64,000 bases of DNA, from the IMG/VR virus record IMGVR_UViG_3300020188_000808, positions 1-64,000 of that record; one strand, written 5' to 3'. The notes beneath the pieces are model-generated. The model was not told where the DNA came from, made no database searches, and worked only from the letters and a program-made list of their open reading frames with translations. Position numbers and translations under genes: made by a program. This document shows positions 283-62,100 of this stretch, one piece after another. The first letter of the stretch is position 1; every line of letters starts with the position of its first letter.

Positions 283-420
283 CAAGGGTGCGGAAATCAG
301 GTCGTGTAGGGTGAATTGAACTCCGGTATCAATGTTTCCAATTACGTTCCCGGCGGGTGGATCTATCTGCGATCCTCTATGTTGAACTTCCCTCTACCTC
401 CTTGCCCTTATTGTTCTTAT

Positions 421-449
421 AGTATATGGCCAAAGGCACCTAAAGTCAA
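421..449 (-). promoter_or_regulatory. Divergent sigma70-type promoter (leftward)
   Basis: Minus strand TTGACT-17-TATACT followed by the leader ATAAGAACAATAAGGGCA, identical to the forward leader at 5578-5595. Confidence 0.75.
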
Positions 450-523: not shown

Positions 524-558
524 GTAAAGACAATAAGGAATTAGAGAGGGCATAGAAA

Positions 559-996
559 ATGAAATTAGCGATCCACACACAATACAAAGAGAACTATGGC
601 GCACATGACTGGGATGGCCAGGGTGAGTGTCCGCAGTATTGGAAGTTCAAAGGTGGAGAGACCTTTGTTATGGCCATCGAGGATCCCAATCTTAGACCTG
701 AGAACATTGATGATCTTAAGGCGTTGATTGAGTACTCAGACCACTATCAGGAGGAGTATGTCTTAGATTGGAGTTTCGTGGACGAGGGAGAGGCTGTGTG
801 TGAGGACTGGGAGACTCCCTGGACTATATACCGTGAGGCAGATGGGGCCTACTATGCGAGCCGTTGGGTGCCTGCAGAGGACTATTGGACTCCCGGCTAC
901 AAGGGCAAGGCTCAGAGCTATAAGATGGAGCTGGGTGGCGAGAGAAGCCACTATCAAGAGGAGTACGTCAAATTGGCTGAGCCTGAGATGGCTTAG
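559..996 (+). CDS. Hypothetical early phage protein
   Basis: ORF with own promoter and GAGGGCA RBS (546-552). Confidence 0.85.
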   Translation: MKLAIHTQYKENYGAHDWDGQGECPQYWKFKGGETFVMAIEDPNLRPENIDDLKALIEYSDHYQEEYVLDWSFVDEGEAVCEDWETPWTIYREADGAYYASRWVPAEDYWTPGYKGKAQSYKMELGGERSHYQEEYVKLAEPEMA

Positions 997-1029
997 ACGT
1001 GGACAGGTAGGGAGTGGAAACCCGGTTAG

Positions 1030-1089
1030 GCCTTAGACCTATATACAACTAAGGCGGGAGAGCTAGGCGCCCTCATAGAAAGGCCTAGC
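1030..1089 (+). ncRNA. Tandem hairpins; second displays GCCCUC in its loop
   Basis: GCCTTAG/CTAAGGC stem (1030-1055); GCTAGGC/GCCTAGC stem (1062-1089) with loop GCCCTCATAGAAAG. Confidence 0.55.
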
Positions 1090-1145
1090 ATTTATCTGTG
1101 GCATTTGTGCAACACCTGAGCCTTCGCCCATCGGGAGCGTAGTTT

Positions 1146-1174
1146 ATTATAACATATTTTGGACGAGATGTCAA
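1146..1174 (-). promoter_or_regulatory. Divergent antisense sigma70 promoter
   Basis: Minus strand perfect TTGACA-17-TATAAT; no downstream minus-strand gene evident. Confidence 0.8.
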
Positions 1175-1208
1175 CCAAAATAATTAGATTTTTTTTGGTA
1201 AAAAATGG

Positions 1209-1237
1209 TTGACCTTAGACTATTTTGGTGCTATAGT
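1209..1237 (+). promoter_or_regulatory. Early promoter
   Basis: TTGACC-17-TATAGT. Confidence 0.8.
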
Positions 1238-1273
1238 GTAACTATAAACTAAACAACGCAAAGAGGGCAAACT

Positions 1274-1537
1274 ATGCAAAACATTAAATTTCCGTTCGCA
1301 GTACAACTTGCAGGGGACAGCATTTGGGGCTATGAGGGTCCGCAAACTGTCTCAGTCTCAGACATCGCTGTGTACGAGGATGAGGACTACAAGATGATCG
1401 ACGTAGTACACGATACAACGTGGGAGATCTACACAGACAGTGGCTTTGAGGCCGCAATTAGCAAAGCACTTGGCTATGAGGTGCAATTTACAGAGCAAGG
1501 TATGCAACAAAACGGCATGGCCTCTATGGAAGCATAG
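1274..1537 (+). CDS. Hypothetical early protein
   Basis: ORF, promoter, GAGGGCA RBS. Confidence 0.85.
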   Translation: MQNIKFPFAVQLAGDSIWGYEGPQTVSVSDIAVYEDEDYKMIDVVHDTTWEIYTDSGFEAAISKALGYEVQFTEQGMQQNGMASMEA

Positions 1538-1551
1538 CATAAAAAAAATGG

Positions 1552-1580
1552 TTGACACTATAGCATTTTGGTGCTATAGT
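1552..1580 (+). promoter_or_regulatory. Early promoter
   Basis: TTGACA-17-TATAGT. Confidence 0.85.
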
Positions 1581-1603
1581 GTTAATATAATTAGGAGGGC
1601 AAT

Positions 1604-2260
1604 ATGAAAAAGACTATTATAGCAACAGCGATCTTGGCATGTTTGCATACGGCGGCCGCAGGGGCAGAGAAGCTGACATCATTCGATCACGCGGCAGAGC
1701 TAACAGATCAAGCCAAGACCATACTATTCCAAGAGCTGAACGATCAGAACGCAGAGAACCACACACATCCTGCGATCACTTGTCTAGCAGAGAACATCTA
1801 CTTTGAAGCACGAGGCGAGAGCTTTAAGGCCAAGATAGCAGTGGCCAACGTCACACGTAATAGAGTAGAGGACAGCAGATGGCCGAGTACCTACTGTGGT
1901 GTGGTTCAGCAGGGACCTGTGAGGGAATCATGGAAGACCAAGAAGATCAAGGACCTTCCGGACAACCAGCGAGTGTATTACCCACGAAAGCACAGATGTC
2001 AGTTCAGTTGGTACTGTGATGGGGTCAAAGATGTGATATGGGCCAACATGGAACGCACAGGAGAGACCATCGAAGGCAATGCTAGAGCTTGGAGAGAATC
2101 AGTACGTATTGCGATAGCCACACTGGCTCAGGGTGATTACATCATCAAGGACAACACTGGTGGGGCCACTCACTACTATAATCACAACCTAGTTGATCCG
2201 CATTGGGCAGACAGCTATAAAACCACAGCCGTTGTGGGCAATCATACGTTCAAAAAATAG
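1604..2260 (+). CDS. Cell wall hydrolase, SleB/Hydrolase_2 family, with signal peptide
   Basis: Motifs CLAENIYFEARGE, CQFSWYCDG, GATHYY, GNHTF; hydrophobic N-terminus. Confidence 0.9.
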   Translation: MKKTIIATAILACLHTAAAGAEKLTSFDHAAELTDQAKTILFQELNDQNAENHTHPAITCLAENIYFEARGESFKAKIAVANVTRNRVEDSRWPSTYCGVVQQGPVRESWKTKKIKDLPDNQRVYYPRKHRCQFSWYCDGVKDVIWANMERTGETIEGNARAWRESVRIAIATLAQGDYIIKDNTGGATHYYNHNLVDPHWADSYKTTAVVGNHTFKK

Positions 2261-2263
2261 GGG

Positions 2264-2292
2264 TTGACAATTGGATTGGATGATGCTATTAT
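2264..2292 (+). promoter_or_regulatory. Early promoter
   Basis: TTGACA-17-TATTAT. Confidence 0.8.
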
Positions 2293-2320
2293 ATAAACAC
2301 AATAAGGAAATGAGGGCACA

Positions 2321-2644
2321 ATGAAAATTTTAGACATAGAAACAGATGCAACATGGCAGAGTGGTTCAAGCCTCGCAGGCTATGTGACAACCACTTATGA
2401 GGATATCGTGGCCAAGTTTGGTGAGCCAACAGCCGCTGGTGATAAGACCACCGCAGAATGGACACTTGAATTCAAGGTTCTAGAGGACGATGCAGAGGAC
2501 GAGGACGATTGGGACTACGTCTACGCAACCATCTATGACTGGAAAGAATCAAGCACGCCTATGGGGCAGTACCGTTGGCACATTGGTGGGTTCGACAATC
2601 GAGCTGAAGAATGTGTGCAACAGGCCCTGGAAAATAATGGTTGA
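2321..2644 (+). CDS. Hypothetical early protein
   Basis: ORF, promoter, GAGGGCA RBS. Confidence 0.85.
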   Translation: MKILDIETDATWQSGSSLAGYVTTTYEDIVAKFGEPTAAGDKTTAEWTLEFKVLEDDAEDEDDWDYVYATIYDWKESSTPMGQYRWHIGGFDNRAEECVQQALENNG

Positions 2645-2669
2645 CATTTGGATAAAGAGGTGCTATTAT
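2641..2669 (+). promoter_or_regulatory. Early promoter
   Basis: TTGACA-17-TATTAT. Confidence 0.8.
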
Positions 2670-2695
2670 ATAAACATAATAAGGAGGGCAACTAG

Positions 2696-2902
2696 ATGGG
2701 CATGTATAATCTAATAGAAGACAACGTAAACAAGTTCTGGGACATAGCCAACGACAAGGCTGGAGAGTGCGAGAGCTTGGATGAATTCGTTGAAGCAATG
2801 ACTCCGCACGTGGATCTACTACAGGGTAGTTCCGAAGGAGAGTGCGTTGAGGAAGCAATCAGCGAGGCTTGGGGCGAATACTGGGCCAAATATAATATGT
2901 AA
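2696..2902 (+). CDS. Hypothetical acidic early protein
   Basis: ORF with AGGAGGGCA RBS. Confidence 0.8.
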   Translation: MGMYNLIEDNVNKFWDIANDKAGECESLDEFVEAMTPHVDLLQGSSEGECVEEAISEAWGEYWAKYNM

Positions 2903-2909
2903 TTAGGGG

Positions 2910-2938
2910 TTGACTTTTGGTTAACTTGGTGCTATTAT
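2910..2938 (+). promoter_or_regulatory. Early promoter
   Basis: TTGACT-17-TATTAT. Confidence 0.8.
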
Positions 2939-2968
2939 ATAAGAACAATAACAAACAAAGAGGGCAAA

Positions 2969-3169
2969 ATGAAAACAACGATTAACACAATTTCCGGACT
3001 ATTGATAGCAGTTGGACTGATGGCAATGGCAGGTTCAGCCAACGACTGTGATGGTGCTTGTATGGACACGGCCAACACCTTAGGTGAGATGCTAATGGTA
3101 GCAGGTGTAGGTTTTACCATGGTGCTGTTTGGTGCAATGGTCTTAATCAGCAACAGCCAGGAGCAATAG
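2969..3169 (+). CDS. Small membrane protein
   Basis: Two hydrophobic segments; GAGGGCA RBS. Confidence 0.8.
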   Translation: MKTTINTISGLLIAVGLMAMAGSANDCDGACMDTANTLGEMLMVAGVGFTMVLFGAMVLISNSQEQ

Positions 3170-3170
3170 G

Positions 3171-3335
3171 ATGTTGGAAGTAATTGGATTCATCGCTGTA
3201 GCATATCTTATCTTTAAATTCGCACCCGCAATCATCGAAGCAGGGTTCAAGTTCGCTGTGATCTGTTTGGGATTCGTAGCGTTCCTGTTCATCTGTGCAT
3301 GGATTTGGGGTAGCATTTTGGTAATGATTAATTAA
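3171..3335 (+). CDS. Small membrane protein (54 aa, not in ORF track)
   Basis: MLEVIGFIAVAYLIFKF...WGSILVMIN; AGGAG upstream; two hydrophobic segments. Confidence 0.7.
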   Translation: MLEVIGFIAVAYLIFKFAPAIIEAGFKFAVICLGFVAFLFICAWIWGSILVMIN

Positions 3336-3344
3336 AATAAATGG

Positions 3345-3373
3345 TTGACATTCAATTAAATTGAGTGTATACT
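3345..3373 (+). promoter_or_regulatory. Early promoter
   Basis: TTGACA-17-TATACT. Confidence 0.85.
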
Positions 3374-3404
3374 GTAAGTATAACAATTAGGAAACGAGGG
3401 CAAT

Positions 3405-3629
3405 ATGAAACTTAAAAACATTGGTTCAAATATGACAGAGATCGAAGTTAACGGCAAGAGCATCATGTTCAGCTATGAGACTCCGGTTGCAGGCTACTGT
3501 GAGCAGGGTGCGTTTAGAACAGACACCAAGTTCAGCGTAACCACTAGCAAACAGATCAACAAGTACCTAGGTGGCAAAGACGTAGGTAGGGTTGTACCCC
3601 AGGCTTGGATTGAAGGTTTGGTAGCCTAA
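3405..3629 (+). CDS. Hypothetical early protein
   Basis: ORF, GAGGGCA RBS. Confidence 0.85.
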   Translation: MKLKNIGSNMTEIEVNGKSIMFSYETPVAGYCEQGAFRTDTKFSVTTSKQINKYLGGKDVGRVVPQAWIEGLVA

Positions 3630-3823
3630 TGAAAACGATTTTGGTAGTCCTTTGTGCTATGAGCTTGACCGCTTGTGGTACAATGACTCCAAAAGATATG
3701 TTGAAGACCGCGAATGCGTTCCGAAATGTATCTAAGATTACCGCTCCAGGTGTAGAAGAAGAATTGGTTGTTATGACCAAAGACATCTTTGATCCTGCAA
3801 GGGGTGGTGGTTTCAACAAATAA
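3629..3823 (+). CDS. Putative lipoprotein
   Basis: Signal peptide with lipobox LTAC; TAATG coupling to the previous gene. Confidence 0.7.
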   Translation: MKTILVVLCAMSLTACGTMTPKDMLKTANAFRNVSKITAPGVEEELVVMTKDIFDPARGGGFNK

Positions 3824-3826
3824 TGG

Positions 3827-3855
3827 TTGACATACTCACCATTAGATGTTATTAT
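3827..3855 (+). promoter_or_regulatory. Early promoter
   Basis: TTGACA-17-TATTAT. Confidence 0.8.
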
Positions 3856-3893
3856 AACTTGAGTATGAATAGGCAAACAATAGGAGGCCAACA

Positions 3894-4223
3894 ATGAGTA
3901 CCACTAAACTGTACACGGTAGCCGGCACGTCAAACAACAACGGCAAAACAAAAGTAAGGTTCGCGAATGACTATGTGAGTAGATTCAAGATCCTTGTAAA
4001 GAATCAACACGAGGACATCAAAATCGTAGAACTGCCATCAGCAATGAACAAGGCAGATGTATGTAAGTTCTTGTCAACTCATGCAGAGTTCCAGACAGAA
4101 GCACAACAGTCTGCGATCAATGAGTTCGTTGTAAGAAACATCAAACTTGATGCGACTCCAACAGCACCGGCACAGCCTGTAGCTGAAGCAGAGACCATTG
4201 AGGTAGAGCTAGAGACTGCATAG
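3894..4223 (+). CDS. Hypothetical protein
   Basis: ORF with canonical AGGAGG RBS. Confidence 0.85.
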   Translation: MSTTKLYTVAGTSNNNGKTKVRFANDYVSRFKILVKNQHEDIKIVELPSAMNKADVCKFLSTHAEFQTEAQQSAINEFVVRNIKLDATPTAPAQPVAEAETIEVELETA

Positions 4224-4266
4224 TATTGCAGTCCAATAGGGGAGGCACTGACTAAGAGCCTTCCTT

Positions 4267-4359
4267 TGAAGAAGCTGGTTGTGAATGGTTAATACTAGTT
4301 CACGTTGCATTAAACCAGAGCCCGAACGTTGCGTACCAAGGCTCGGCCAGCTTACTTCA
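4267..4359 (+). ncRNA. Putative three-way-junction structured RNA
   Basis: Closing stem TGAAG-AAGCTGG/CCAGCTT-CTTCA with inner stems GTGAA-TGGT/ACTA-TTCAC and GAGCC/GGCTC; two more hairpins upstream (4214-4233, 4238-4266). Confidence 0.5.
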
Positions 4360-4377
4360 TAAATTTTCATTTAGAGG

Positions 4378-4406
4378 TTGACAACCGTCCTTGGTTGTGT
4401 TATAGT
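4378..4406 (+). promoter_or_regulatory. Promoter of tRNA pair
   Basis: TTGACA-17-TATAGT. Confidence 0.85.
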
Positions 4407-4456
4407 AAGACATCATAAGAAGATCAGAAGAGGATCAAATCAAATCATTTTAGTTA

Positions 4457-4533
4457 CTGCCCTTAGCTCAGCTGGATAGAGCAACAGCCTTCTAAGCTGT
4501 AGGTCGTAGGTTCGAATCCTACAGGGCAGGCCA
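4457..4533 (+). tRNA. tRNA-Arg(UCU)
   Basis: Acceptor CTGCCCT/AGGGCAG, anticodon loop CTTCTAA, T-loop TTCGAAT, encoded CCA. Confidence 0.95.
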
Positions 4534-4538
4534 ACAAT

Positions 4539-4626
4539 GCTCGCGTGATGGAATTGGTAGACATACCGGACTTAAAATCCGGAGGCTGTAATGGCCGTGG
4601 CGGTTCGAGTCCGCCCGCGAGTACCA
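4539..4626 (+). tRNA. tRNA-Leu(UAA)
   Basis: Acceptor GCTCGCG/CGCGAGT, anticodon loop CTTAAAA, long variable arm, GGTTCGAGTCC, encoded CCA. Confidence 0.95.
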
Positions 4627-4638
4627 AAGGTAAGTACC

Positions 4639-4679
4639 GCCCGGGGGAGCAACCGCCCTCATGTAAGACTTCCCCGGGC
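4639..4679 (+). ncRNA. GC-rich hairpin displaying GCCCUC
   Basis: GCCCGGGGGAG/CTTCCCCGGGC 11-bp stem; loop CAACCGCCCTCATGTAAGA; directly downstream of tRNA-Leu. Confidence 0.6.
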
Positions 4680-4694
4680 AGGGAAATAAAATGG

Positions 4695-4723
4695 TTGACA
4701 AGTGATCCAATTGGTGTTATAGT
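4695..4723 (+). promoter_or_regulatory. Early promoter
   Basis: TTGACA-17-TATAGT. Confidence 0.85.
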
Positions 4724-4756
4724 ATATGTATAGTTAGAACAAACGGAGGGCATCCA

Positions 4757-4945
4757 ATGATTAGAGTACACACAACAGGACTTGAAGGTGAACGTTTCCT
4801 CAAGCTAGATGAAGTCAACATCCACACACAGAAGATTGACTCTTACAACGGCGCACCATACATCTTGTTCGAGCACAAGGACTATCCAGGAGGAGCGTTG
4901 AGTGCTACATTCGATGGCACCTATTGGGACTGTGATTTAGATTAA
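4757..4945 (+). CDS. Hypothetical early protein
   Basis: ORF, GGAGGGCA RBS. Confidence 0.8.
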   Translation: MIRVHTTGLEGERFLKLDEVNIHTQKIDSYNGAPYILFEHKDYPGGALSATFDGTYWDCDLD

Positions 4946-4952
4946 TTAGGGG

Positions 4953-4981
4953 TTGACAACTGCACCTTTTGGTGCTATAGT
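4953..4981 (+). promoter_or_regulatory. Early promoter
   Basis: TTGACA-17-TATAGT. Confidence 0.85.
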
Positions 4982-5008
4982 ATAAACATAATAACAAATG
5001 AGGGCACT

Positions 5009-5281
5009 ATGAACAATCAATATGAAGTTACCAAGCAGAACGCAAAACTAGCCGACATTGGTCGTGCGATGATGGACTATTCAGAGTTCTACGGTGTTGC
5101 TAATGGACTGGGTCATCTCAAAGATGCTCAGCTGGCCACACTGAATCAGCTCACCCATGTAGGCGGAATGCTTACCAAAATTGGTGTGCTGTTTGGACCG
5201 CGAATGAGTGATCTAAGCGATAGCGACAGAGAATTAGTTGCAAAGTTCAGCAAAAAAGAACTTGACATTCAGAACGTTTGA
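5009..5281 (+). CDS. Hypothetical early protein
   Basis: ORF, GAGGGCA RBS. Confidence 0.85.
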   Translation: MNNQYEVTKQNAKLADIGRAMMDYSEFYGVANGLGHLKDAQLATLNQLTHVGGMLTKIGVLFGPRMSDLSDSDRELVAKFSKKELDIQNV

Positions 5282-5290
5282 TTGTATACT
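5262..5290 (+). promoter_or_regulatory. Early promoter
   Basis: TTGACA-17-TATACT. Confidence 0.8.
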
Positions 5291-5322
5291 GTAAGTATAA
5301 ACAATAAAGAAGAGAGGGCAAA

Positions 5323-5541
5323 ATGGCAACAGATTTGAAATCACACGCACAGGGCGTATCATTGACAAGGTTCGCTGGTGGTGTGGACCGCGGAGTATGC
5401 GTCCAGGTCACAACCAAGAAGCGTCAACCTGTAGGCACAGAGTTCTTTGACTCATTGCAATTGACACGAGCACAGGCCGCGGCATTGGCGGCTGACTTGA
5501 TGGACTTTGCTCAGGGCAGAGAAACAGAAGATTTTGAATAA
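5323..5541 (+). CDS. Hypothetical early protein
   Basis: ORF, GAGGGCA RBS. Confidence 0.85.
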   Translation: MATDLKSHAQGVSLTRFAGGVDRGVCVQVTTKKRQPVGTEFFDSLQLTRAQAAALAADLMDFAQGRETEDFE

Positions 5542-5548
5542 TTAGAGG

Positions 5549-5577
5549 TTGACAACTGTAGCATGTGATGCTATAGT
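5549..5577 (+). promoter_or_regulatory. Early promoter
   Basis: TTGACA-17-TATAGT. Confidence 0.85.
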
Positions 5578-5624
5578 ATAAGAACAATAAGGGCACACTA
5601 ACACACACAACTGAGAGGGTTAAC

Positions 5625-6629
5625 ATGACAACACAAATTGAAATTAAAAGCGGCACGTACAAGATCCGTGGCAAAGACGTAGAACTTGCGGGCATGGTCT
5701 TTCCAATGGTGGAAGAGTTCAAAGTAGGTAGCCAAGGTGGTTACGTAACAGTGGATGGATCAGCAATGGCTGGCTTCCCAGACCGTAACATCAAGATCAA
5801 AGTTAACAGCAGTGATGACTATGCTGTTACTAAAAAGAAGACAACTGTACGTGAAGAAACAGATGAAGAGACCATTGAGCGTCTTAGAGAACGTTTCCAG
5901 ATCCTAGAAGACATGACCAAAGCATGTAAGAAAGGCGATGTACGTGCAATGATCGTAACAGGCCCTCCAGGTGTGGGCAAGAGTTTTGGTGTAGAGAAAG
6001 TGCTAGGCAAGCATGACATGATCGCAACGTTAGGTGAACGACCTGCCAAGTATCAGGTAGTCAAGGGTGCTATGAGTGCAATTGGTCTCTACTGTAAACT
6101 GTTCAACTATGCAGACAAAGACAATGTACTAGTGTTTGATGACTGTGACTCAATCCTACAAGAAGACCTGAGTTTAAACATCTTAAAAGCCGCACTGGAT
6201 TCGAAAGCTTCAAGACGTATACATTGGAACACAGACAGTTTCAAGTTGCGTAACGAAGGTGTGCCGGATTCATTCGAGTTCAAAGGCTCATGCATATTCA
6301 TTACCAACATCAAGTTTGAAAACGTTAAGAGCAAGAAGATGAGAGATCACCTAGCGGCCATTGAAAGTAGATGCCACTATATCGATCTTACCATTGACAG
6401 CGAACGTGAGAAGATGTTGCGTATCAAACAAATCGTAGGTGATGGCATGTTAGCTAAACATGCACTAGATGAAGAAACACACGAACGAGTGGTAGACTTC
6501 ATCGACATCAACAAAAAGAATCTCCGAGAGCTTAGTCTAAGGACTGTGCTTAAGGTGGCCGATCTCGCTAAAGCCTTTCCAGACAACTGGGAAGCAATGG
6601 CTGAGAATACAGTACTGCAACGAGCCTAA
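5625..6629 (+). CDS. AAA+ family P-loop ATPase
   Basis: Walker A GPPGVGKS, Walker B LVFDDCD, sensor FITN, arginine-finger-like ESRC. Confidence 0.85.
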   Translation: MTTQIEIKSGTYKIRGKDVELAGMVFPMVEEFKVGSQGGYVTVDGSAMAGFPDRNIKIKVNSSDDYAVTKKKTTVREETDEETIERLRERFQILEDMTKACKKGDVRAMIVTGPPGVGKSFGVEKVLGKHDMIATLGERPAKYQVVKGAMSAIGLYCKLFNYADKDNVLVFDDCDSILQEDLSLNILKAALDSKASRRIHWNTDSFKLRNEGVPDSFEFKGSCIFITNIKFENVKSKKMRDHLAAIESRCHYIDLTIDSEREKMLRIKQIVGDGMLAKHALDEETHERVVDFIDINKKNLRELSLRTVLKVADLAKAFPDNWEAMAENTVLQRA

Positions 6630-6696
6630 TAGCCCTCAACCCTGGCTCTGTACTGTACCGAACCCCTGCTAGTGTGCCCTCGCTATGCAGGGGTTC
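6608..6696 (+). ncRNA. Two tandem hairpins each displaying (U)GCCCU(C)
   Basis: TACAGTAC..GAGCC/GGCTC..GTACTGTA with GCCCTC (6632-6637) in the loop; GAACCCCTGC-TAGTG/CGCTA-GCAGGGGTTC with loop TGCCCT (6675-6680). Confidence 0.65.
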
Positions 6697-6746
6697 ACCT
6701 TGACAAAAACTCCATAAAATAAATGAAAAAAACCTGCTGATTTTGG

Positions 6747-6775
6747 TTGACATATTGGATTGCAGACTGTATACT
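6747..6775 (+). promoter_or_regulatory. Early promoter
   Basis: TTGACA-17-TATACT. Confidence 0.85.
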
Positions 6776-6807
6776 GTAAGTATAAACAATAAAGAAGAGG
6801 GTACGCA

Positions 6808-7137
6808 ATGAGTTATATCACAGACAAATGGAACGCAGGTGAAGTACACTTCCAAGATGGCGCGGCTGGTTGGTTGTTTGATTCAGGTGAGTTCCGTCCG
6901 CTTATGGACGATGCTATGCGAGAACTACACTATGAAGGCCTGGTTGATGCAGACTGTGTAGAGATCACAGCGTTTGCCAGAGACTTGTACACAACCAAAT
7001 CAATTGCAGAGTACCGTGTAGCACAGAGTCAACGTAGTGCAGAACAGATTGCTGAAGAACGAAGCGAAGCTAGAGCCGCTATGGGCGAGGGTGTAGAGAT
7101 GGTAAACATCATAACAGGAGAACGATACACAACTTAG
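6808..7137 (+). CDS. Hypothetical early protein
   Basis: ORF, GAGGGTA RBS variant. Confidence 0.85.
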   Translation: MSYITDKWNAGEVHFQDGAAGWLFDSGEFRPLMDDAMRELHYEGLVDADCVEITAFARDLYTTKSIAEYRVAQSQRSAEQIAEERSEARAAMGEGVEMVNIITGERYTT

Positions 7138-7154
7138 AGTTGTGTATTTTTTGG

Positions 7155-7183
7155 TTGACCTTTGGCTCAACTGAATGTATTAT
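7155..7183 (+). promoter_or_regulatory. Early promoter
   Basis: TTGACC-17-TATTAT. Confidence 0.75.
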
Positions 7184-7214
7184 AATAGTATAAACTAAAC
7201 AAAGCGAGGGCAAT

Positions 7215-55621: not shown

Positions 55622-56183
55622 AGAATTATTTTCTATTCCTATATTGGAACATAGTGTTCCAGAACGCATTGCAAATGAAGTTGAACAGTTTGTAGTGCCA
55701 AGACTGTCTTTAATTCCAAGACCTGATAACAATGCTCCCCACGCTACTGATTACTTTGAAGATAAAAAAGTAGTACATCTAATCAACGATGTGCCTGAAT
55801 TATTTGGTGAGATACAAGATTGTGTTAATAGATTTCAACAACAATCTAGTATTAAACATTTACATGACGTTAATCAATACACTTGGTGGACACAAGACTA
55901 TCACGAAGGCGATATACATACTGAACACGAACATGGTATGAATAAGATATCAGGAGTGTATTGGGTAAGAGCTAATGAAAACGCTGGTGGGTTATGTTTT
56001 AGAAATCCTAATCCATATGTTGAATATGCACATAACGAAAACTCACAGTACGGCCGCCGACAATTCGAATTCCAACCTATAAAGGGCAAGTTATTACTTT
56101 TCCCTTCTTACTTAAAACATGCAGTAATGCCTAGTAGTAAAAACGTTGTTCGAACTACTATAGCATTTAACGTAGTACGTTAA
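55608..56183 (+). CDS. 2OG-Fe(II) oxygenase-like protein
   Basis: HEH, SGVYW, FPSYLKHAV, RTTIAFN. Confidence 0.8.
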   Translation: MSVFRELFSIPILEHSVPERIANEVEQFVVPRLSLIPRPDNNAPHATDYFEDKKVVHLINDVPELFGEIQDCVNRFQQQSSIKHLHDVNQYTWWTQDYHEGDIHTEHEHGMNKISGVYWVRANENAGGLCFRNPNPYVEYAHNENSQYGRRQFEFQPIKGKLLLFPSYLKHAVMPSSKNVVRTTIAFNVVR

Positions 56184-59100
56184 GCCTGAGCTTCACCCCA
56201 TCTTAGAATAATGTTCGCTTTAGTATCTGTACCACCTGTTTTATAAACGTTGATTGCTAATACGTCTGGACCATTTGGATAAGTTCCTCTACCACCTAGT
56301 GTGGTATTAGTTAACTCTTTCAATGAGCTTAGAGATAATGAACTTGATTGTCCTGGTGTTGCAATAAAGGAGAATACAGTTTCACCTGGCTGTGCATAAG
56401 GTGGTTGTCCAAATAAGAACCCTACCGTATCACCTGCTGTTATCGTTGCATTTGAACTCTGTGTAAACGTTACTCTGTAATATGTTGTTGAACCAAATGA
56501 TAGTTCTTGCACACCAGCAACCGCAGTACCCGCTGAGAACTTAGAGTCTTCAACAATGTCGCCTGCAATAGCGCCTGTTGCGTTCCAGGTTGTTTCTGTA
56601 AAGAACAAGTAGTTAGAACCAGTTAAATCTCCACCAATTCTAAATGTTACTGTTGGATCAGCATTTTGTACTAGAATATTTTGATTAAATCTTAAACGTA
56701 CTCTACCGTACCATGGTTCTTGATAAACTTCTTCAATAGTTCTTGGATTACTTGTATAGTCGTTACTACCTGATGCAGTAACCTGCACACCTGTTGTAAC
56801 TTCGCCATTTAAAGCGGCAAACTCTGCTGTTGACAAATACTGATATCTACTATTTCTATTACCGTATAAGAATTCAGCAGTTTGTGTCATTGGACCTTGT
56901 ACTGTTGCACTTCTAATAACCTGTGTAGCACCAGTTGACCATACAACAGAACCGCCCGGAGCAACTTGAGCAAAGCTCGGTTGTCCACCAGCCGCCGCAC
57001 CAGTTAGTGCAGACCAACCAACATCATTTGGATTAATTGGATAGTTTTGTGGATTCAAAATTCCTTCAACAACAATACCGCCAGTAATTGGATTATTTGA
57101 ACTGTCATATCCGTCTGATGTAATTTCAATACCTTCTAGTAGCAACTGAGCTCTGTTTAGTAGTTCTCTTTCACCTAAGTCACCAACAATAGCGTTACTA
57201 ACACTAGGTGCTAGTCTTAACATAAACACAGTATTTCTTAATGTACTAATATCGTTACCTGCAGAAGCGTATGAGAAAATATAACCACGGTCTTCATCAA
57301 ATCCACCGTCTGTTAGGAACGCTGAACCCCAGTGTGATATGATTGGAGTAATTGTATTACTAATCAAAATTACACCAGTTCGCTCGTCATGTGGTACAGC
57401 ACCACCTGCTGTATAAGTTCTTGTTGCACCTGCCGCAAAGTTTGTTAGTGGAGCACTTCTAGTACACCCTGTTAGGGTATCACCTGTTACACCAGTATAA
57501 GATATCATTTCGTTATCAATAATAACTGTACCAGTTGTTGGGAAGAATGAAGATGTAATTAATGGAATTGTATTTTGTGTTGCATCCATTGCCGTCGCTA
57601 GCCTATCATTTGGACCTTCGTTAGTAACTTCATAACGCACAGGCATGTTACCAGTACGCATAAATGCTTCTGTGTTAATGTTTGAGTTACGCATTCTGTG
57701 ATAGAAAATAAAGTTACCATCATCACCACGTAGCATGTAGTCAATAAATCCAGCACCGTACCAACTGTACTGAATACCAATCATCTGCATCTTACTGATG
57801 TCCATGATATATCCACTACTTCCTAGACCGTCTAGTGTGTCTTTGTTAAAGTCAGCTTGTTTAGTTTTCTTATCACTAATCAAACATAATTTCACACCAG
57901 TAGCATTTGAATTACCTCTAAAGTCAGGTGTTACTGTCATAGCATTATCTGCTGTAATCTGTGAAACAACGTGTGTCATTCCTTTAATAACAATTCTATC
58001 ACCAGCTTTTAACTGATCTCTAAATCTTGTTCCTGACCCTGTACATGTGTTTGAATCAACATTAATTGCAACAGTACCTGCTAACTGTAGTGTAGCAGTT
58101 CTTTGTACTGCACTAAAGTTTGTTCCATCGTACTCCATAAAGATTCCGTTTTGATCATCAAATGCACCTGAACGCACAGTTGCACCGTGCCAGTTAAGTA
58201 ATGATACTTGGGCTCTTGTACTTAATACTGGTGTTAATGAAGCAGGAGCAATTTGCGAAATAACTTTAAATGTTCTTTCACTTACAATACTTGCTACTGT
58301 GTAATTTCCATTATATCCTGGAGTTTCAATACCAATTAATCTAATTTGTCCACCAACTTGTAGTCCATGGTCAACGTCATCTGTTGTAACTGTAATGAAA
58401 GTACCTGCTAGTAGATCGTCTGCTGTTACATCTAATAGATCGTAACTTGGAGCAAACAACGCACCAGTGGTATACATAATACCTTTACCTGACTGGTATC
58501 TAATATATTTTTTACTCTGTCTAATTGCTTGAGCACCGTGTTGCGGTCCTCCTGTTCCAAGCATAACTCCACCATCATATGGTCTGTGTACAAAGAAACT
58601 ATCTGGTCTTGGATAAAGCGTTGCACTAATATCACCTGTTTGTGTAATAGTACCTGGAGCTCTACACTGATATCTTAAACTTGTTGTAGTTGGAACCTGT
58701 TGTGCAAAGAACGGTCCTTCTAATAGTGTATGATTGTTAACGCCATCGTCTGAGTTAACTGTAACAATAAATGCATCTCCTGGAATCAATCCATGTGCTG
58801 ATGCAAATGAAACTTCTGTAGTTGCCAACGCCGCAAATCCAATTAATGTTCTAGCTGGTATTTGAGCAGTTATTAATTCTGACATAGTTACTGTTGCATA
58901 CGTTACTGTTGTATCTCCTGCAACTGCTGTTCCTACAATACTTGCGTCAACAATACTACCGTCTGTTGCTACTTCAGCAATAGTAATTGTTGCATCGTTA
59001 GTTGGTGATGTACCTCCTAACTCTGTACCTGCTACTTTAATTTTATTACCAGCTACATAAGATTCACCATCAACTGTAATTATTGGATTACTATAACTGC

Positions 59101-62100
59101 TACTAGTTCTTTGAATAGTAAATTCTGCATTTGAACCAAAGTTTCCTAATGGTGTTGGACCAACATCAACATATGATCCTACTCCACTTGGTCCTGTACC
59201 TGCGGTAGATACTGAAGCAATTGAACCTTCTCCGGTTCTTGTTCCGCTATTATCTGTAGTAAGAATATTAATTGTTAAATCGTTTGCTGGGCTTTCGCCA
59301 CCTAGTTGTGTACCCGGAACACGTATGTTTTGATCTGGAAAGTATCCAGTTCCTGGAGTATTAACTACTGCTGAATATACTTGGTTACTAATTGTAATAT
59401 CAAATGTTGCAGTACTACCAGATAATGTTGTTATCTGTCCTGCTGATTGTGATATATCTTGGTATACAACCTCATCATTACCTGTTCCTGAAATACTTAC
59501 AGTTAGGATCTCTCCGCCACTGTCAATAGTTAGTACAGTAATTGTTGCATCGTTTGCTGGAGTTGCACCACCTAGTTCGGTACCTGCTACTACAAATGTT
59601 TCGCCAACTAAGTAACCGCCGCCTGCATTAGTAATGTTTACTCCATAAACTGTTGCAGTTTTTGTAACACTGAAGTCTGCACCAACACCTGCTCCTGCTG
59701 GATATGTATACGTTACACTTGGATATGTTTCGTTAGCATTTGGTCCTGTACCAGTAATAGTAAATCCGGTAATAACACCAGAATTTACAGATGTTACTTC
59801 TATGAGTGCATCGTTAGTTGGACTACTTCCACCTGGGAATGTGTCTCCTATAATAAACATTCTGTCGCCAACTGCAAATCCCTGCGTAGGAGCCGCTGAT
59901 GTACCTGTATGTGTAATACTTAAAATTGTTCCTGCGCCATCTACTGATGTAATTGTAATAGTAATATCGTTGGTTGGTGATGTACCGCCAACGTTAGAAC
60001 CTAGTATTGTAAGTGTTGAACCTTGAGCATAACTATCTCCAGCTGTTGAACCTAATACAACAGTATAAGTTGTGTCAGCGTTTTGAGTAACATTAAATGT
60101 TGCTCCAGTACCAAAGACATTAAATCCTGATACAATATTAGTAAATGTTGCACTATTAACAGCCGTACCTGTAACTGAAACTCCTGTAATTTCACCACTA
60201 CCACCAACGCTGTCGATAGTAACTGTTGCATCGTTTCCTGGACTTGCGCCACCTAAATCAGAACCAAGAACTAGTAAAGTTTCACCTTGTGTGTATCCTG
60301 ATCCTGCACCAGGAGCGGTAACTGTATATACATTTCCTGTAAACCCTATGTTAATTTCAGCTCCAGTACCAATTGAACTTGTAGTAAATGGTACAGCGGA
60401 ATAGTTTGCTACAGCATCGCCACCAATTCCTGAATCAGTGAATGTTAAAATTGCACCAGCGCCATCTACTGAATCAACAGTAATATCTAAATCGTTTGTT
60501 GGACTTGCTCCGCCAAACACAGTACCTGGAATTCTAATAACTGATCCAACTGTGTATCCAGCATCAAGTGAGCCTGCATTTTTTGTAGTTGTGTAAATGT
60601 TATTTGTTAATACAACGTCCCAAGCCGCACCAGTTCCGCCAATTTGGGTTTCTGGAGGTAAATCAGTGTATGTTGGATTATCTGTAACTGCTGTATAAGT
60701 TCCAGCACTACTAGTAACATCAAGAATTAATCCAGTACCTAAGCCGTTAAGATTAGTACCTGTTACATTTGTAAATACTGCATTACCATCAAACGCTGAA
60801 CCTGTAAAGCTAAATGTTAAAATTGCACCACTACCGTCAACTGTATCAACTGTAATTCTAAGATCATTAGTATTTGATATACCACCTAATTGTTGTCCGT
60901 CAACAATTAATACATCGCCTGCTTCAAAATTAATACCTGCGGTTTGTAGTGAAACAGTATATTGTCCTAAAGTAGGATTTCCTCTATCAATATTAAATGT
61001 TGCGCCTGATCCCAATGATGTATAATTAGTACCAGTTATTCCTGTGTAACTAACTGTATTTCCTACAATGTTTGCTGTAGTATTTCCATCAAAGTTAAGT
61101 GTATTTCCTACAATAGTAGTAACATGAATCGCTGTTCCGTCACCTCTATCAATTGCTTCACCTTGTACAATACCTGTTGCATCAACAACATCAATAGCAT
61201 TAGAGCCTGCTGGAAAATCTCCGCTAACGTCTAAAGTATTTAATGTACCACCGTTTTCAAATCCTACTCCGCCACCAGTTAAACTTGTAACCTGAGCGCC
61301 AACTGCAATGCCTGCTCCGGTAGCAACCGTTGCAACAACAAAAGTCCAATCAGCACCACCGCCGTTTCCTAATGATGCATCTGAAATAGTAATAATATCT
61401 CCTGGAGCATTATTTCGTCCTGGATTTTCAATTGCTGTAACTGTCGCGGCACCTGTGCCGTCAACAACAATAGTATATGTACCTACAATTAAATCCGCCG
61501 CAATACTATCGGAACTACCTGTGCTTACTGAATATGTTCCTGCTAAACGTGAAGCATCAGCCGCTCCATATGTACCAACAGTTGATACTTGTCCGCTTTC
61601 GTTAACCACTGGAGAACCAACTTCTGGAGCAACACCAGACCATGTAATAATATTTGCACCTTCTGCCGCCGTTAATGGGTTGACAAATGTTCCTTCAGCA
61701 CCTTGTGATAAGATACTAAACTGTGGTTGGCCAATTGCCGCACCTGTATAAAATCCAGCTTGTCTTAATTGTGTGTAGAATGTTGATAATACTTCACCGT
61801 TAGTAACACCAACTTTTGATTTTGCAAAAAATGTAAATGTATTATCTGTTGGAACAGTTGAAACTACAAATGATCCTTCTGCTCTACTTGCTCCAGCAAC
61901 ACTATTTTCTAATGCTTTAATTGTAATAGGAGTACCTGCCGTAATACCATGTGGTCCAACTGTTGTTACAGTAATTTTACTTTGGCCAATACCATCAGTT
62001 CCAACTGATGCATCTGTTACAACTGATGATACTTGTGTATCAGTACCTGGTACTTCGTAAATACTTGGATATCCTCTTTGCATAGCAATCGCTTGCCATT

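What the first reader, a model, noticed from the sequence alone, without database searches (positions are those of the whole stretch)
6608..6696. AAA+ ATPase 3' hairpin complementary to its own 5' leader
Seen: TAGTGTGCCCT (6670-6680) is the exact 11-nt complement of AGGGCACACTA (5590-5600) in this gene's 5' UTR. TGCCCTCGCT (6675-6684) complements AGCGAGGGCA (7203-7212) in the leader of gene 7215. The first hairpin encloses the ATPase stop codon, so terminating ribosomes could remodel it. Inference: 5'-3' looping or target-specific feedback.
Basis: partly seen in the sequence, partly recalled or inferred. Interest (0 to 1): 0.6.

Follow-up and report, generated by a model that had tools for sequence, protein, structure and literature searches.

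The report
Anti-ribosome-site hairpins after phage ATPase gene
Two RNA hairpins just after an early ATPase gene of an uncultured giant phage display, in their loops, the exact complement of the ribosome-binding sequence used by that phage's early genes, and this match changes in step in related phages, which points to a built-in RNA switch on early protein synthesis.

Summary
Alone they are chance-level: 11-nt inverted repeats within 1.2 kb occur 59 times in the window against about 66 in shuffles. The 11-nt duplex is not conserved in homologues and has a pairing probability of 0.02 in a fold of the whole mRNA.

The core of the idea holds up. Both hairpins (6608-6657, which encloses the stop codon, and 6660-6696) expose GCCCUC/UGCCCUC. 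That is the complement of GAGGGCA, the ribosome-binding motif of 11 early genes in the window. None of 42 non-early genes has this motif.

In 231 related IMG/VR loci the loop motif tracks each phage's own leader:
- UGCCCUC with GAGGGCA
- UCGCUCC with GGAGCGA
- UUGCUCCUCC with GGAGGAGCAA
- UUUCGCUCCUAA with UUAGGAGCGAAA
- in one clade, a 13-nt loop complement to an element found only in the ATPase leader

Stems covary, and the first anti-site usually abuts the stop codon.

The best reading is a 3'-end anti-ribosome-site element, like icaR in S. aureus. It would pair with the ATPase leader and, where early leaders are homogenised, with the whole early class, and would limit translation. The sign of the effect and the choice between cis and trans action are inferred, not shown. 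I rate it a new variant of a known kind.

The parts
5549..5577 (+). Early sigma-70-type promoter of the ATPase gene (TTGACA, 17-nt spacer, TATAGT, with extended TG)
   Evidence: 11 of 12 match. It is one of about 16 near-consensus early promoters in 1-7.2 kb.
5590..5600 (+). It sits at the position of the normal cassette ribosome site and is followed by an inserted spacer and the true ribosome site.
   Evidence: The 6-nt core is complementary to the loop UGCCCU. The 5-nt extension is not conserved in homologues.
5615..5620 (+). Shine-Dalgarno GAGGGT of the ATPase gene (ATG at 5625)
   Evidence: It pairs with UGCCCUC through one G-U. Duplex energy with the hairpin loops is about -13 kcal/mol.
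5625..6629 (+). P-loop ATPase ORF (334 aa), a homologue of T4-type NrdC.10 and PHROG 1250. Function unknown.
   Evidence: The Pfam AAA_16 and AAA matches are below their cut-offs. Walker A is GPPGVGKS.
6608..6657 (+). Hairpin 1. The 5' arm is the last codons of the ATPase. The loop 6627-6643 holds the TAA stop (6627-6629) and the anti-ribosome-site GCCCUC (6632-6637).
   Evidence: A stop-enclosing hairpin with compensated synonymous changes is visible in the homologues. The first GCCCTY lies within -1..+5 nt of the stop in 25 of 41 distinct loci.
6660..6696 (+). Hairpin 2: 15 pairs with one bulge and the hexaloop UGCCCU (6675-6680). The invariant 10-mer UGUGCCCUCG runs 6673-6682. No U-run follows in this contig.
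   Evidence: The apical 5-pair stem covaries across 33 distinct copies. In some close relatives the same hairpin is followed by a T-run.
6797..6802 (+). Shine-Dalgarno GAGGGT of the next early gene (ATG 6808), 120 nt downstream of the hairpin 2 loop
   Evidence: Duplex energy with the hairpin 2 loop region is -19.7 kcal/mol.
7203..7212 (+).
   Evidence: the conserved 7-mer GAGGGCA plus 3 further bases.
1054..1099 (+). Another hairpin with GCCCUC in its loop (core stem 1062-1068/1083-1089, motif 1069-1074), after ORF 559-996
4637..4682 (+). Another hairpin with GCCCUC in its apical region (4655-4660), directly after tRNA-Arg and tRNA-Leu
546..7212 (+). The target class: 11 early-gene ribosome sites GAGGGC at 546, 1263, 1595, 2312, 2684, 2960, 3396, 4746, 5000, 5314 and 7206. 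Each lies inside a repeated promoter-leader cassette.
   Evidence: None of 42 non-early genes in 9-64 kb has AGGGC in its ribosome site.

Best explanation
The two hairpins are anti-ribosome-binding-site elements at the 3' end of the ATPase message. Each presents, in a loop held open by a sequence-variable stem, the complement (UGCCCUC / GCCCUC) of the extended Shine-Dalgarno GAGGGCA.

GAGGGCA is private to this phage's early promoter-leader cassettes. Loop-to-leader pairing of 6-8 nt here, and up to 13 nt in relatives, would occlude the ribosome site of the ATPase mRNA itself. Because all early leaders in this clade are near-identical, it could also occlude the sites of other early mRNAs. The expected result is less initiation and probably faster decay.

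Hairpin 1 has its 5' arm in the last codons and its anti-site right after the stop codon. A terminating ribosome must therefore melt and cover it, which ties the availability of the anti-site to ongoing translation.

Shown by sequence comparison:
- the hairpins exist and their stems covary;
- the loop motif is complementary to the ribosome-site motif;
- the two motifs co-vary across clades;
- the motif is confined to the transcribed strand;
- the first anti-site abuts the stop codon;
- the targeted motif is restricted to early genes.

Inferred:
- that the duplex forms in vivo;
- that its effect is repression;
- whether it acts within one molecule, between molecules, or both.
For: (1) Window. 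4 of 5 GCCCTC on the + strand lie in intergenic hairpin loops. All 11 GAGGGC are early ribosome sites. Neither motif occurs elsewhere in the 64 kb on either strand. None of 42 non-early genes has AGGGC in its ribosome site.

(2) Across 99 distinct loci, 309 of 647 promoter-anchored ribosome-site windows have a perfect complement of at least 7 nt in the post-stop region of their own locus. Controls give 44 (sense), 26 (reversed), 30 (complement only) and 55 (shuffled).

(3) Clade-level covariation.
- GAGGGCA-type loci: 34 of 37 carry UGCCCUC after the stop and 0 carry UCGCUCC.
- GGAGCGA-type loci: 19 of 19 carry UCGCUCC and 0 carry UGCCCUC.
- A complement of at least 8 nt to the locus's own ribosome sites is found in 35 of 42 and 19 of 21 loci. 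Against ribosome sites of the other type the figures are 4.4% and 7.7%.
- Further matched pairs: L096 UUUCGCUCCUAA with UUAGGAGCGAAA; L110 and L118 UUGCUCCUCC with GGAGGAGCAA; L127 ACUCUCUCC with GGAGAGAGU; L135 GUUACUCCU with AGGAGUAAC; L148 UUGCUCCUU with AAGGAGCAA.

(4) Clade D. The leader element CAUUCCACGCAAA occurs once per locus, in the ATPase leader. Its 12-13-nt complement also occurs once, in the hairpin after the ATPase stop. In two loci it lies at +400 or +1100 nt instead. L175 covaries, with CCCACGCGA against UCGCGUGGG.

(5) The stem of the apical mini-hairpin covaries while the loop is invariant.

(6) The first anti-site lies -1..+5 nt from the stop in 25 of 41 A-type loci, and 0-9 nt from it in 21 of 35 B-type loci.

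(7) Precedent. The icaR 3'UTR motif UCCCCUG pairs with its own SD, blocks initiation and triggers RNase III (PMC3868564). Anti-SD-like 8-mers hundreds of nt from the ribosome site pair with it, repress translation and destabilise mRNA in B. subtilis (PMC12697547).
Against: - There are no experimental data and no transcript ends; the phage is uncultured.
- A nested thermodynamic fold keeps both hairpins closed and pairs the leader elsewhere. Loop-to-leader kissing is not modelled by that tool.
- A 6-8-nt duplex is short.
- The hairpin after the tRNA genes (4637-4682) follows no ORF, so coupling to termination cannot be general.
- The conserved U-G and G-C closing pairs of hairpin 2 are not explained by target pairing.
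- Homologues in cultured phages lack the feature.
- Many clade-D loci keep the leader element but show no complement within 120 nt of the stop.
- The sign of the effect is unknown.
Confidence: 0.55

Rival explanations
1. Class-wide trans regulator. The multi-hairpin 3' region is processed into a stable RNA whose 2-5 anti-site loops titrate the ribosome sites of all early mRNAs. It would act as a timer that shuts off the early class, functionally like T4 RegB but RNA-based. This is a sub-variant of the best explanation and differs only in target range.
For: There are 2-5 motif-bearing hairpins in tandem per A-type locus (117 in 48 loci). The motif is shared by 11 early leaders and absent from 42 non-early genes. 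Anti-site hairpins also follow another ORF and the tRNA pair. S. aureus RNAIII and Rsa C-rich loops act in this way (cited in PMC3868564).
Against: No independent promoter lies upstream of the hairpins. There is no evidence for processing or accumulation. In clade D the complement matches only the ATPase leader.
Confidence: 0.25
2. One reading: an 11-nt 5'-3' duplex (5590-5600 with 6670-6680) loops the ATPase mRNA, and a 10-nt duplex targets gene 7215 specifically.
For: Both exact matches exist. Given the 6-nt core, a 5-nt extension at one of 16 sites has a nominal probability of about 0.03. Duplex energy is -21 kcal/mol if hairpin 2 is opened.
Against: The extension is absent from all homologues, and the 5590 core itself is absent from the closest relatives. 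Forming the duplex requires melting the 15-pair hairpin 2, and its pairing probability is 0.02. 11-nt inverted repeats are at chance frequency in the window.
Confidence: 0.05
3. The hairpins are only structural 3'-end elements (terminators, or barriers to exonucleases). The loop complementarity would then be a by-product of recombination among promoter-stem-loop cassettes (PeSL-type shuffling) or of terminal inverted repeats of a mobile gene cassette.
For: The early region is built of repeated promoter-leader cassettes like PeSLs (PMC4122927). In some relatives the last hairpin has a T-run. In clade D a 13-bp inverted repeat flanks the gene. A reverse-oriented cassette copy lies at 403-449.
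Against: Only 12 of 117 motif hairpins are followed by a T-run, and hairpin 2 here has none. The complement sits in the loop while the stems vary. It is strand-specific. It is maintained with different sequences in at least 6 groups. Neither recombination by-products nor transposon ends predict these features.
Confidence: 0.1
4. The loops are binding sites for a phage or host RNA-binding protein (a CsrB-like sponge, a boxB-like antitermination site or a nuclease site), and the complementarity to ribosome sites is incidental.
For: Arrays of hairpins with an invariant loop and conserved closing pairs (UG..CG) resemble protein-recognition hairpins.
Against: The loop sequence differs completely between clades, yet each time equals the complement of that clade's leader motif. 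A protein model needs that coincidence repeated at least 6 times.
Confidence: 0.07

Closest known systems
icaR mRNA 5'-3' UTR pairing in Staphylococcus aureus (PMC3868564)
   Same: A pyrimidine-rich anti-SD motif in the 3' untranslated region is complementary to the Shine-Dalgarno region of the same mRNA. In icaR this blocks initiation and promotes decay, and the authors leave cis or trans action open.
   Different: - Here the setting is a phage.
- The anti-site is displayed in hairpin loops and occurs in 2-5 copies.
- The first copy abuts the stop codon, whereas in icaR it lies 260 nt downstream.
- The target motif is shared by a whole class of early genes.
- No experimental proof exists.
C-rich loop regulatory RNAs (RNAIII, RsaE; UCCC motif)
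   Same: Hairpin loops expose a C-rich sequence that pairs with the SD of target mRNAs. Several loops occur per RNA.
   Different: Those are independently transcribed sRNAs of a bacterium. Here no separate promoter is seen, and the loops also match the non-16S 3' extension (GCA, CGA, CAA) of the phage's own leaders.
Long-range RBS masking opened by translation in RNA phage MS2 (Min Jou interaction). This item rests on my own knowledge.
   Same: A distant complementary segment masks a ribosome site, and ribosomes translating through one partner relieve the masking.
   Different: In MS2 the masking partner lies inside the upstream coat gene and serves to couple two genes. Here the partner lies at or after the stop codon of the same gene.
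PeSL cassettes (promoter-early stem-loop) of T4-type phages (PMC2839356, PMC4122927)
   Same: Repeated units of a sigma-70-like early promoter, SD and start codon flank small variable ORFs, and some have a stem-loop just upstream.
   Different: PeSL stem-loops are described as terminators with conserved stems. In the text passages read, nothing is said of loops complementary to the SD. In this window most cassettes have no stem-loop at all, with stop-to-promoter gaps of 4-18 nt.
T4 RegB endoribonuclease. This item rests on my own knowledge.
   Same: A phage device aimed specifically at the Shine-Dalgarno sequences of early mRNAs, to end early expression.
   Different: RegB is a protein nuclease that cuts GGAG. 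Here the proposed effector is RNA, and specificity comes from base pairing.

Membership tests
3'UTR anti-SD / 5'-3' UTR pairing element (icaR type) | An anti-SD sequence lies downstream of the stop codon on the same transcript | tested here: met
   GCCCUC at 6632-6637 and UGCCCU at 6675-6680 lie 3-51 nt after the stop and before the next promoter at 6747. Transcript ends are inferred.
3'UTR anti-SD / 5'-3' UTR pairing element (icaR type) | Complementarity to the gene's own ribosome-binding region, maintained in evolution | tested here: met
   A 6-8-nt core is present in most A-type homologues. Clade D has a 12-13-nt complement to a leader element unique to the gene, with a covarying variant.
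3'UTR anti-SD / 5'-3' UTR pairing element (icaR type) | The duplex forms and inhibits initiation or triggers decay | not testable with these tools
Kissing interactions are not modelled.
Intrinsic (Rho-independent) terminator | A G+C-rich hairpin immediately followed by a U-run | tested here: not met
   Neither hairpin is listed by the terminator scan. The sequence after hairpin 2 is ACCTTGACAAAAAC. Only 12 of 117 motif hairpins in relatives have a T-run.
PeSL (promoter-early stem-loop) cassette | A conserved early promoter + SD + start cassette repeated through a variable region | tested here: met
   About 16 near-consensus promoters with near-identical leaders lie in 1-7.2 kb.
PeSL (promoter-early stem-loop) cassette | A stem-loop directly upstream of each cassette promoter, acting as terminator | tested here: not met
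   Most stop-to-promoter gaps are 4-18 nt with no hairpin. Hairpins are found at only about 5 gaps.
Independent trans-acting sRNA with C-rich loops (RNAIII/Rsa type) | Its own promoter and terminator define a separate small transcript | tested here: not met
   No promoter-like site is found on the + strand between 5549 and 6747, and there is no U-run terminator.
Independent trans-acting sRNA with C-rich loops (RNAIII/Rsa type) | C-rich loops complementary to the SD of targets | tested here: met
CsrB/RsmZ-type protein sponge | Multiple hairpin loops with GGA motifs | tested here: not met
   The loops are CCCUC, CGCUCC or CU-rich and are never GGA.
Any curated RNA family (Rfam 15) | A covariance-model match | tested here: not met
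   Only the two tRNAs reach the gathering score in the window. Nothing relevant appears at E <= 1 in 6560-6760.

The most novel reading that the evidence does not exclude
A lineage of uncultured giant phages gives its early genes a private, extended Shine-Dalgarno 'address' (GAGGGCA, GGAGCGA and so on) and encodes matching multi-loop anti-address RNAs at the 3' ends of early messages. These RNAs would switch off the whole early class by RNA-RNA pairing. Release of the first loop would be gated by ribosomes terminating on the ATPase gene. The result would be an RNA-only, class-specific translational timer that co-evolves with its address.
Probability: 0.25. Interest if true: 0.8.

Novelty: new variant of a known kind. 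Interest (0 to 1): 0.66.

Why it matters
Phages must turn early genes off on schedule. The known devices are proteins, such as nucleases, repressors and sigma modifiers.

Here the comparative signal points to an RNA-only device. An anti-ribosome-site loop is placed at the stop codon and 3' end of an early message. It is matched to a leader motif that only early genes carry, and it co-evolves with that motif across many phage groups.

This would extend the rare bacterial 5'-3' UTR pairing mechanism (icaR) to viruses. It would explain why the early Shine-Dalgarno sequences carry conserved bases that do not pair with 16S rRNA. It would also give a compact, portable part (leader plus matching hairpin) for setting translation yield per transcript. 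The natural compensatory changes offer a ready-made test set.

Tried and rejected
- Nucleotide search of cultured phages found no match. The phage is known only from IMG/VR; the window equals the first 64 kb of a 267.8-kb contig.
- RNAalifold on a MAFFT alignment of hairpin 1 gave no structure, because indels misalign the 3' arms. Per-sequence folds gave only a modest excess of coding-arm/post-stop pairs over shuffles, 15.5 against 9.7.
- The fifth GCCCTC (5962, Walker A codons GGC CCT CCA) pairs with the SD in the minimum-energy fold. However, that codon choice is no commoner in the GAGGGCA clade than in clades with other leaders, so I do not count it as part of the element.
- ATPase homologues in cultured phages have no leader/3' complement: Vibrio phage D479, Yersinia fHe-Yen9-01, Aeromonas phage 25, Acinetobacter ZZ1, Cronobacter S13 and Agrobacterium Atu_ph07. 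PA5oct has an 8-nt match (AGUAGCAU/AUGCUACU) unique to the leader and the post-stop hairpin stem. On its own this is weak, with p about 0.07.
- Longest-common-substring scores against mononucleotide shuffles had little dynamic range, so I replaced them with counts and cross-clade controls.
- The covariation count was made on hairpins pre-selected for at least 4 flanking pairs (33 of 200 TGCCCT sites, about 4 expected by chance). Its percentage of paired positions is therefore biased upward.
- Rfam gave nothing.
- No protein fold, complex prediction or large protein search was needed.
Full report
**Context**

The window is identical to the first 64 kb of IMGVR_UViG_3300020188_000808, a 267.8-kb viral contig, and window and contig coordinates coincide. 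It has no nucleotide match among cultured phages. By terminase (53% identity) and by the ATPase (47%), its nearest cultured relatives are the PA5oct-like giant Pseudomonas phages. Helicases, terminase, tail sheath and tail tube genes fill 9-56 kb.

Positions 1-7.3 kb on the + strand form an early region with these features:
- About 16 near-consensus sigma-70 promoters (TTGACA-17-TATAxT, mostly with an extended TG).
- Each promoter is followed by a near-identical short leader and a small ORF.
- Two tRNA genes lie at 4457-4626.
- Most stop codons lie only 4-18 nt before the next promoter.

ORF 5625-6629 is a P-loop ATPase homologous to T4-type NrdC.10 and PHROG 1250. Its function is unknown, and its Pfam AAA matches are below threshold.

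**The observation**

The region folds into two hairpins, and the 151-nt region has z = -4.7 against shuffles.
- Hairpin 1 (6608-6657) takes its 5' arm from the last ATPase codons. Its 17-nt loop holds the TAA stop and GCCCUC.
- Hairpin 2 (6660-6696) has 15 pairs and the hexaloop UGCCCU.

The 11-nt match by itself is not significant:
- The window holds 59 exact 11-nt inverted repeats within 1.2 kb, against 65.7 +/- 9.6 in shuffles.
- Five of the eleven bases are in the stem of hairpin 2.
- The duplex has a probability of about 0.02 in the partition function of the full mRNA.

**What the matches are made of**

GCCCTC occurs five times on the + strand of the whole window. Four copies are in intergenic hairpin loops (1069, 4655, 6632, 6676), and one is in the Walker A codons. 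The complement GAGGGC occurs eleven times, all between 546 and 7206, and every copy is the Shine-Dalgarno of an early ORF. Neither motif occurs anywhere else on either strand. None of 42 replication or structural genes has AGGGC in its ribosome site; they use AAGGA/AGGAG types.

- The first has five extra bases at 5590, where the ATPase leader carries a displaced copy of the cassette ribosome site.
- The second has three extra bases at 7203.

**Homologues**

Three scans of IMG/VR gave 231 loci with relatives of the ATPase at 46-100% identity, of which 155 have distinct post-stop regions.

In homologous loci the longest complement between the ATPase leader and the 3' region is 6-8 nt, which is the core. 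The 5590 element reads GGCAAT in the closest relatives.

The core is strikingly conserved and co-varies:
- **Clade A (GAGGGCA leaders).** The 190 nt after the stop hold on average 2.4 hairpins with GCCCU(C) in the loop, 117 in 48 loci.
- **Clade B.** The early leaders read AAGGAGCGA, and the two post-stop hairpins have loops GAUUCGCUCCC, in which UCGCUCC is the exact complement.
- **Further groups.** L096 has a 12-nt match (UUUCGCUCCUAA with UUAGGAGCGAAA). L110 and L118 have 10 nt (UUGCUCCUCC with GGAGGAGCAA). L127, L132 and L151 have CU-repeat loops against GGAGAGAG-type leaders. L135 has GUUACUCCU with AGGAGUAAC, while its relative L148 has UUGCUCCUU with AAGGAGCAA.

The matched bases include the 3' extension of the Shine-Dalgarno (GCA, CGA, CAA, UAAC), which is not complementary to the 16S rRNA tail.

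The numbers are:

| Measure | Own locus | Controls |
|---|---|---|
| Ribosome-site windows with a perfect complement of at least 7 nt in the post-stop region (of 647) | 309 | 44 sense, 26 reversed, 30 complement-only, 55 shuffled |
| A-type loci with a complement of at least 8 nt to a ribosome-site set | 35 of 42 | 4.4% against B-type sets |
| B-type loci with a complement of at least 8 nt to a ribosome-site set | 19 of 21 | 7.7% against A-type sets |

**Clade D gives the cleanest case for 5'-3' pairing of one gene**

In clade D the early leaders are not homogenised. The element CAUUCCACGCAAA, immediately 5' of the ribosome site, occurs once per locus, in the ATPase leader. Its 12-13-nt complement also occurs once:
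- In eight distinct loci it lies in a hairpin 20-30 nt after the ATPase stop and before a canonical terminator.
- In two loci it lies 400 or 1100 nt further downstream.

L175 carries the covarying pair CCCACGCGA / UCGCGUGGG. Other clade-D loci keep the leader element but show no complement within 120 nt of the stop.

**Structure and position**

- The apical mini-hairpin NNN-UG[UGCCCU]CG-NNN keeps an invariant 10-mer while its three outer pairs change with compensation: GC, AU, UA and CG types, with 42 double-changed cells against 9.5 in shuffles. The set was pre-selected for pairing, so the percentage of paired positions is inflated.
- In hairpin 1, synonymous changes in the last codons are matched by changes in the 3' arm; this is visible. 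An alignment-based test failed.
- The first anti-site lies -1 to +5 nt from the stop codon in 25 of 41 A-type loci, and 0-9 nt from it in 21 of 35 B-type loci. That is inside the footprint of a terminating ribosome.
- Only 12 of 117 motif hairpins are followed by a T-run, and hairpin 2 here has none. These are therefore not simply terminators.

**Interpretation**

The following features all argue for an RNA-RNA interaction between 3' loops and 5' ribosome sites:
- the strand specificity;
- the placement of the motif in loops;
- the variable stems;
- the repeated re-matching of the loop to the leader in groups with quite different motifs.

They argue against a protein site, a DNA site or a recombination by-product.

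The closest established mechanism is the icaR mRNA of S. aureus. Its 3'UTR motif UCCCCUG pairs with its own Shine-Dalgarno, blocks the initiation complex and creates an RNase III substrate (PMC3868564). A 2025 preprint shows that anti-SD-like 8-mers placed hundreds of nucleotides from the ribosome site pair with it, inhibit initiation and destabilise mRNA, and that such sequences are normally depleted from genes (PMC12697547). A conserved, loop-displayed anti-site is therefore very likely to be repressive.

I infer that the element limits translation of the ATPase message. In clades with homogenised early leaders it could also act on other early messages. Ribosomes finishing the ORF would transiently melt and mask the first anti-site. 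Whether this gives negative feedback, a lock on messages that have lost their ribosomes, or a class-wide shut-off by stable 3' fragments cannot be decided from sequence.

The promoter-leader repeats resemble PeSL cassettes of T4-type phages (PMC4122927). The passages of that paper I read do not mention anti-SD loops, and most cassettes here lack a stem-loop.

**Verdict**

The sequence observation is confirmed. The specific 11-nt and 10-nt duplexes are chance extensions. The underlying idea is supported by strong comparative evidence and generalises to a family of anti-ribosome-site hairpins in uncultured giant phages. I rate this a new variant of a known kind. My literature searches found no description of it in phages.

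Noticed in passing
window 1146-1174 (- strand): A perfect 12/12 sigma-70 promoter points leftwards into the end of ORF 559-996. On that strand the hairpin 1062-1089 would display GAGGGC, the sense ribosome-site motif, in its loop. It could be an antisense transcript or an inverted cassette.
   Followed up: no
window 403-449 (- strand): A reverse-oriented early cassette. The promoter is at 449-421, and 403-421 is the exact 19-nt reverse complement of the ATPase leader at 5577-5595.
   Followed up: partly
window 4378-4682: tRNA-Arg(TCT) and tRNA-Leu(TAA) sit under an early promoter and are followed directly by a hairpin with GCCCUC in its apical region. This places an anti-site element on a transcript with no ORF.
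   Followed up: partly
L044, L046, L025 leaders; window 5590-5609: Several clade-A leaders are 'dual'. An AGGGCA(A)CAC element lies near the transcript start, and a separate downstream ribosome site GAGGG(A/T) lacks the CA. This suggests that AGGGCA has a role distinct from ribosome binding.
   Followed up: partly
L155-L203 (clade D), about 18-30 nt before the ATPase ATG: The leader element (A/T)TCCACGCAAAGGAA is almost invariant in about 45 loci, yet only about 10 of them have its complement within 120 nt of the stop. The element may also have another partner or bind a protein.
   Followed up: partly
L233 (Pseudomonas phage PA5oct) 1110-1117 and 2285-2303: AGUAGCAU lies between the SD and the AUG of the ATPase homologue. 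It recurs only in the post-stop hairpin, whose 5' arm copies the site and whose 3' arm is its complement (8 nt). This is weak statistically, but the phage is cultured.
   Followed up: partly
L110, L111, L118, L127, L132, L151 post-stop loops: The first hairpin after the ATPase stop has a 18-24-nt loop made almost wholly of CU repeats (for example CUCUCUCCUCC). These would offer several overlapping registers against GGAGAGAG-type leaders.
   Followed up: partly
window 4224-4377: A 155-nt structured gap after ORF 3894-4223 holds several strong hairpins that lack the GCCCUC motif. Their function is unknown.
   Followed up: no
window 56180-63889 (- strand): A single 2569-aa ORF runs to the end of the window. 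It was not examined.
   Followed up: no
window 5961-5970: In the minimum-energy fold of the ATPase mRNA, the true ribosome site (5611-5621) pairs with the Walker A codons GGCCCTCC. Codon usage across clades suggests this is incidental.
   Followed up: yes
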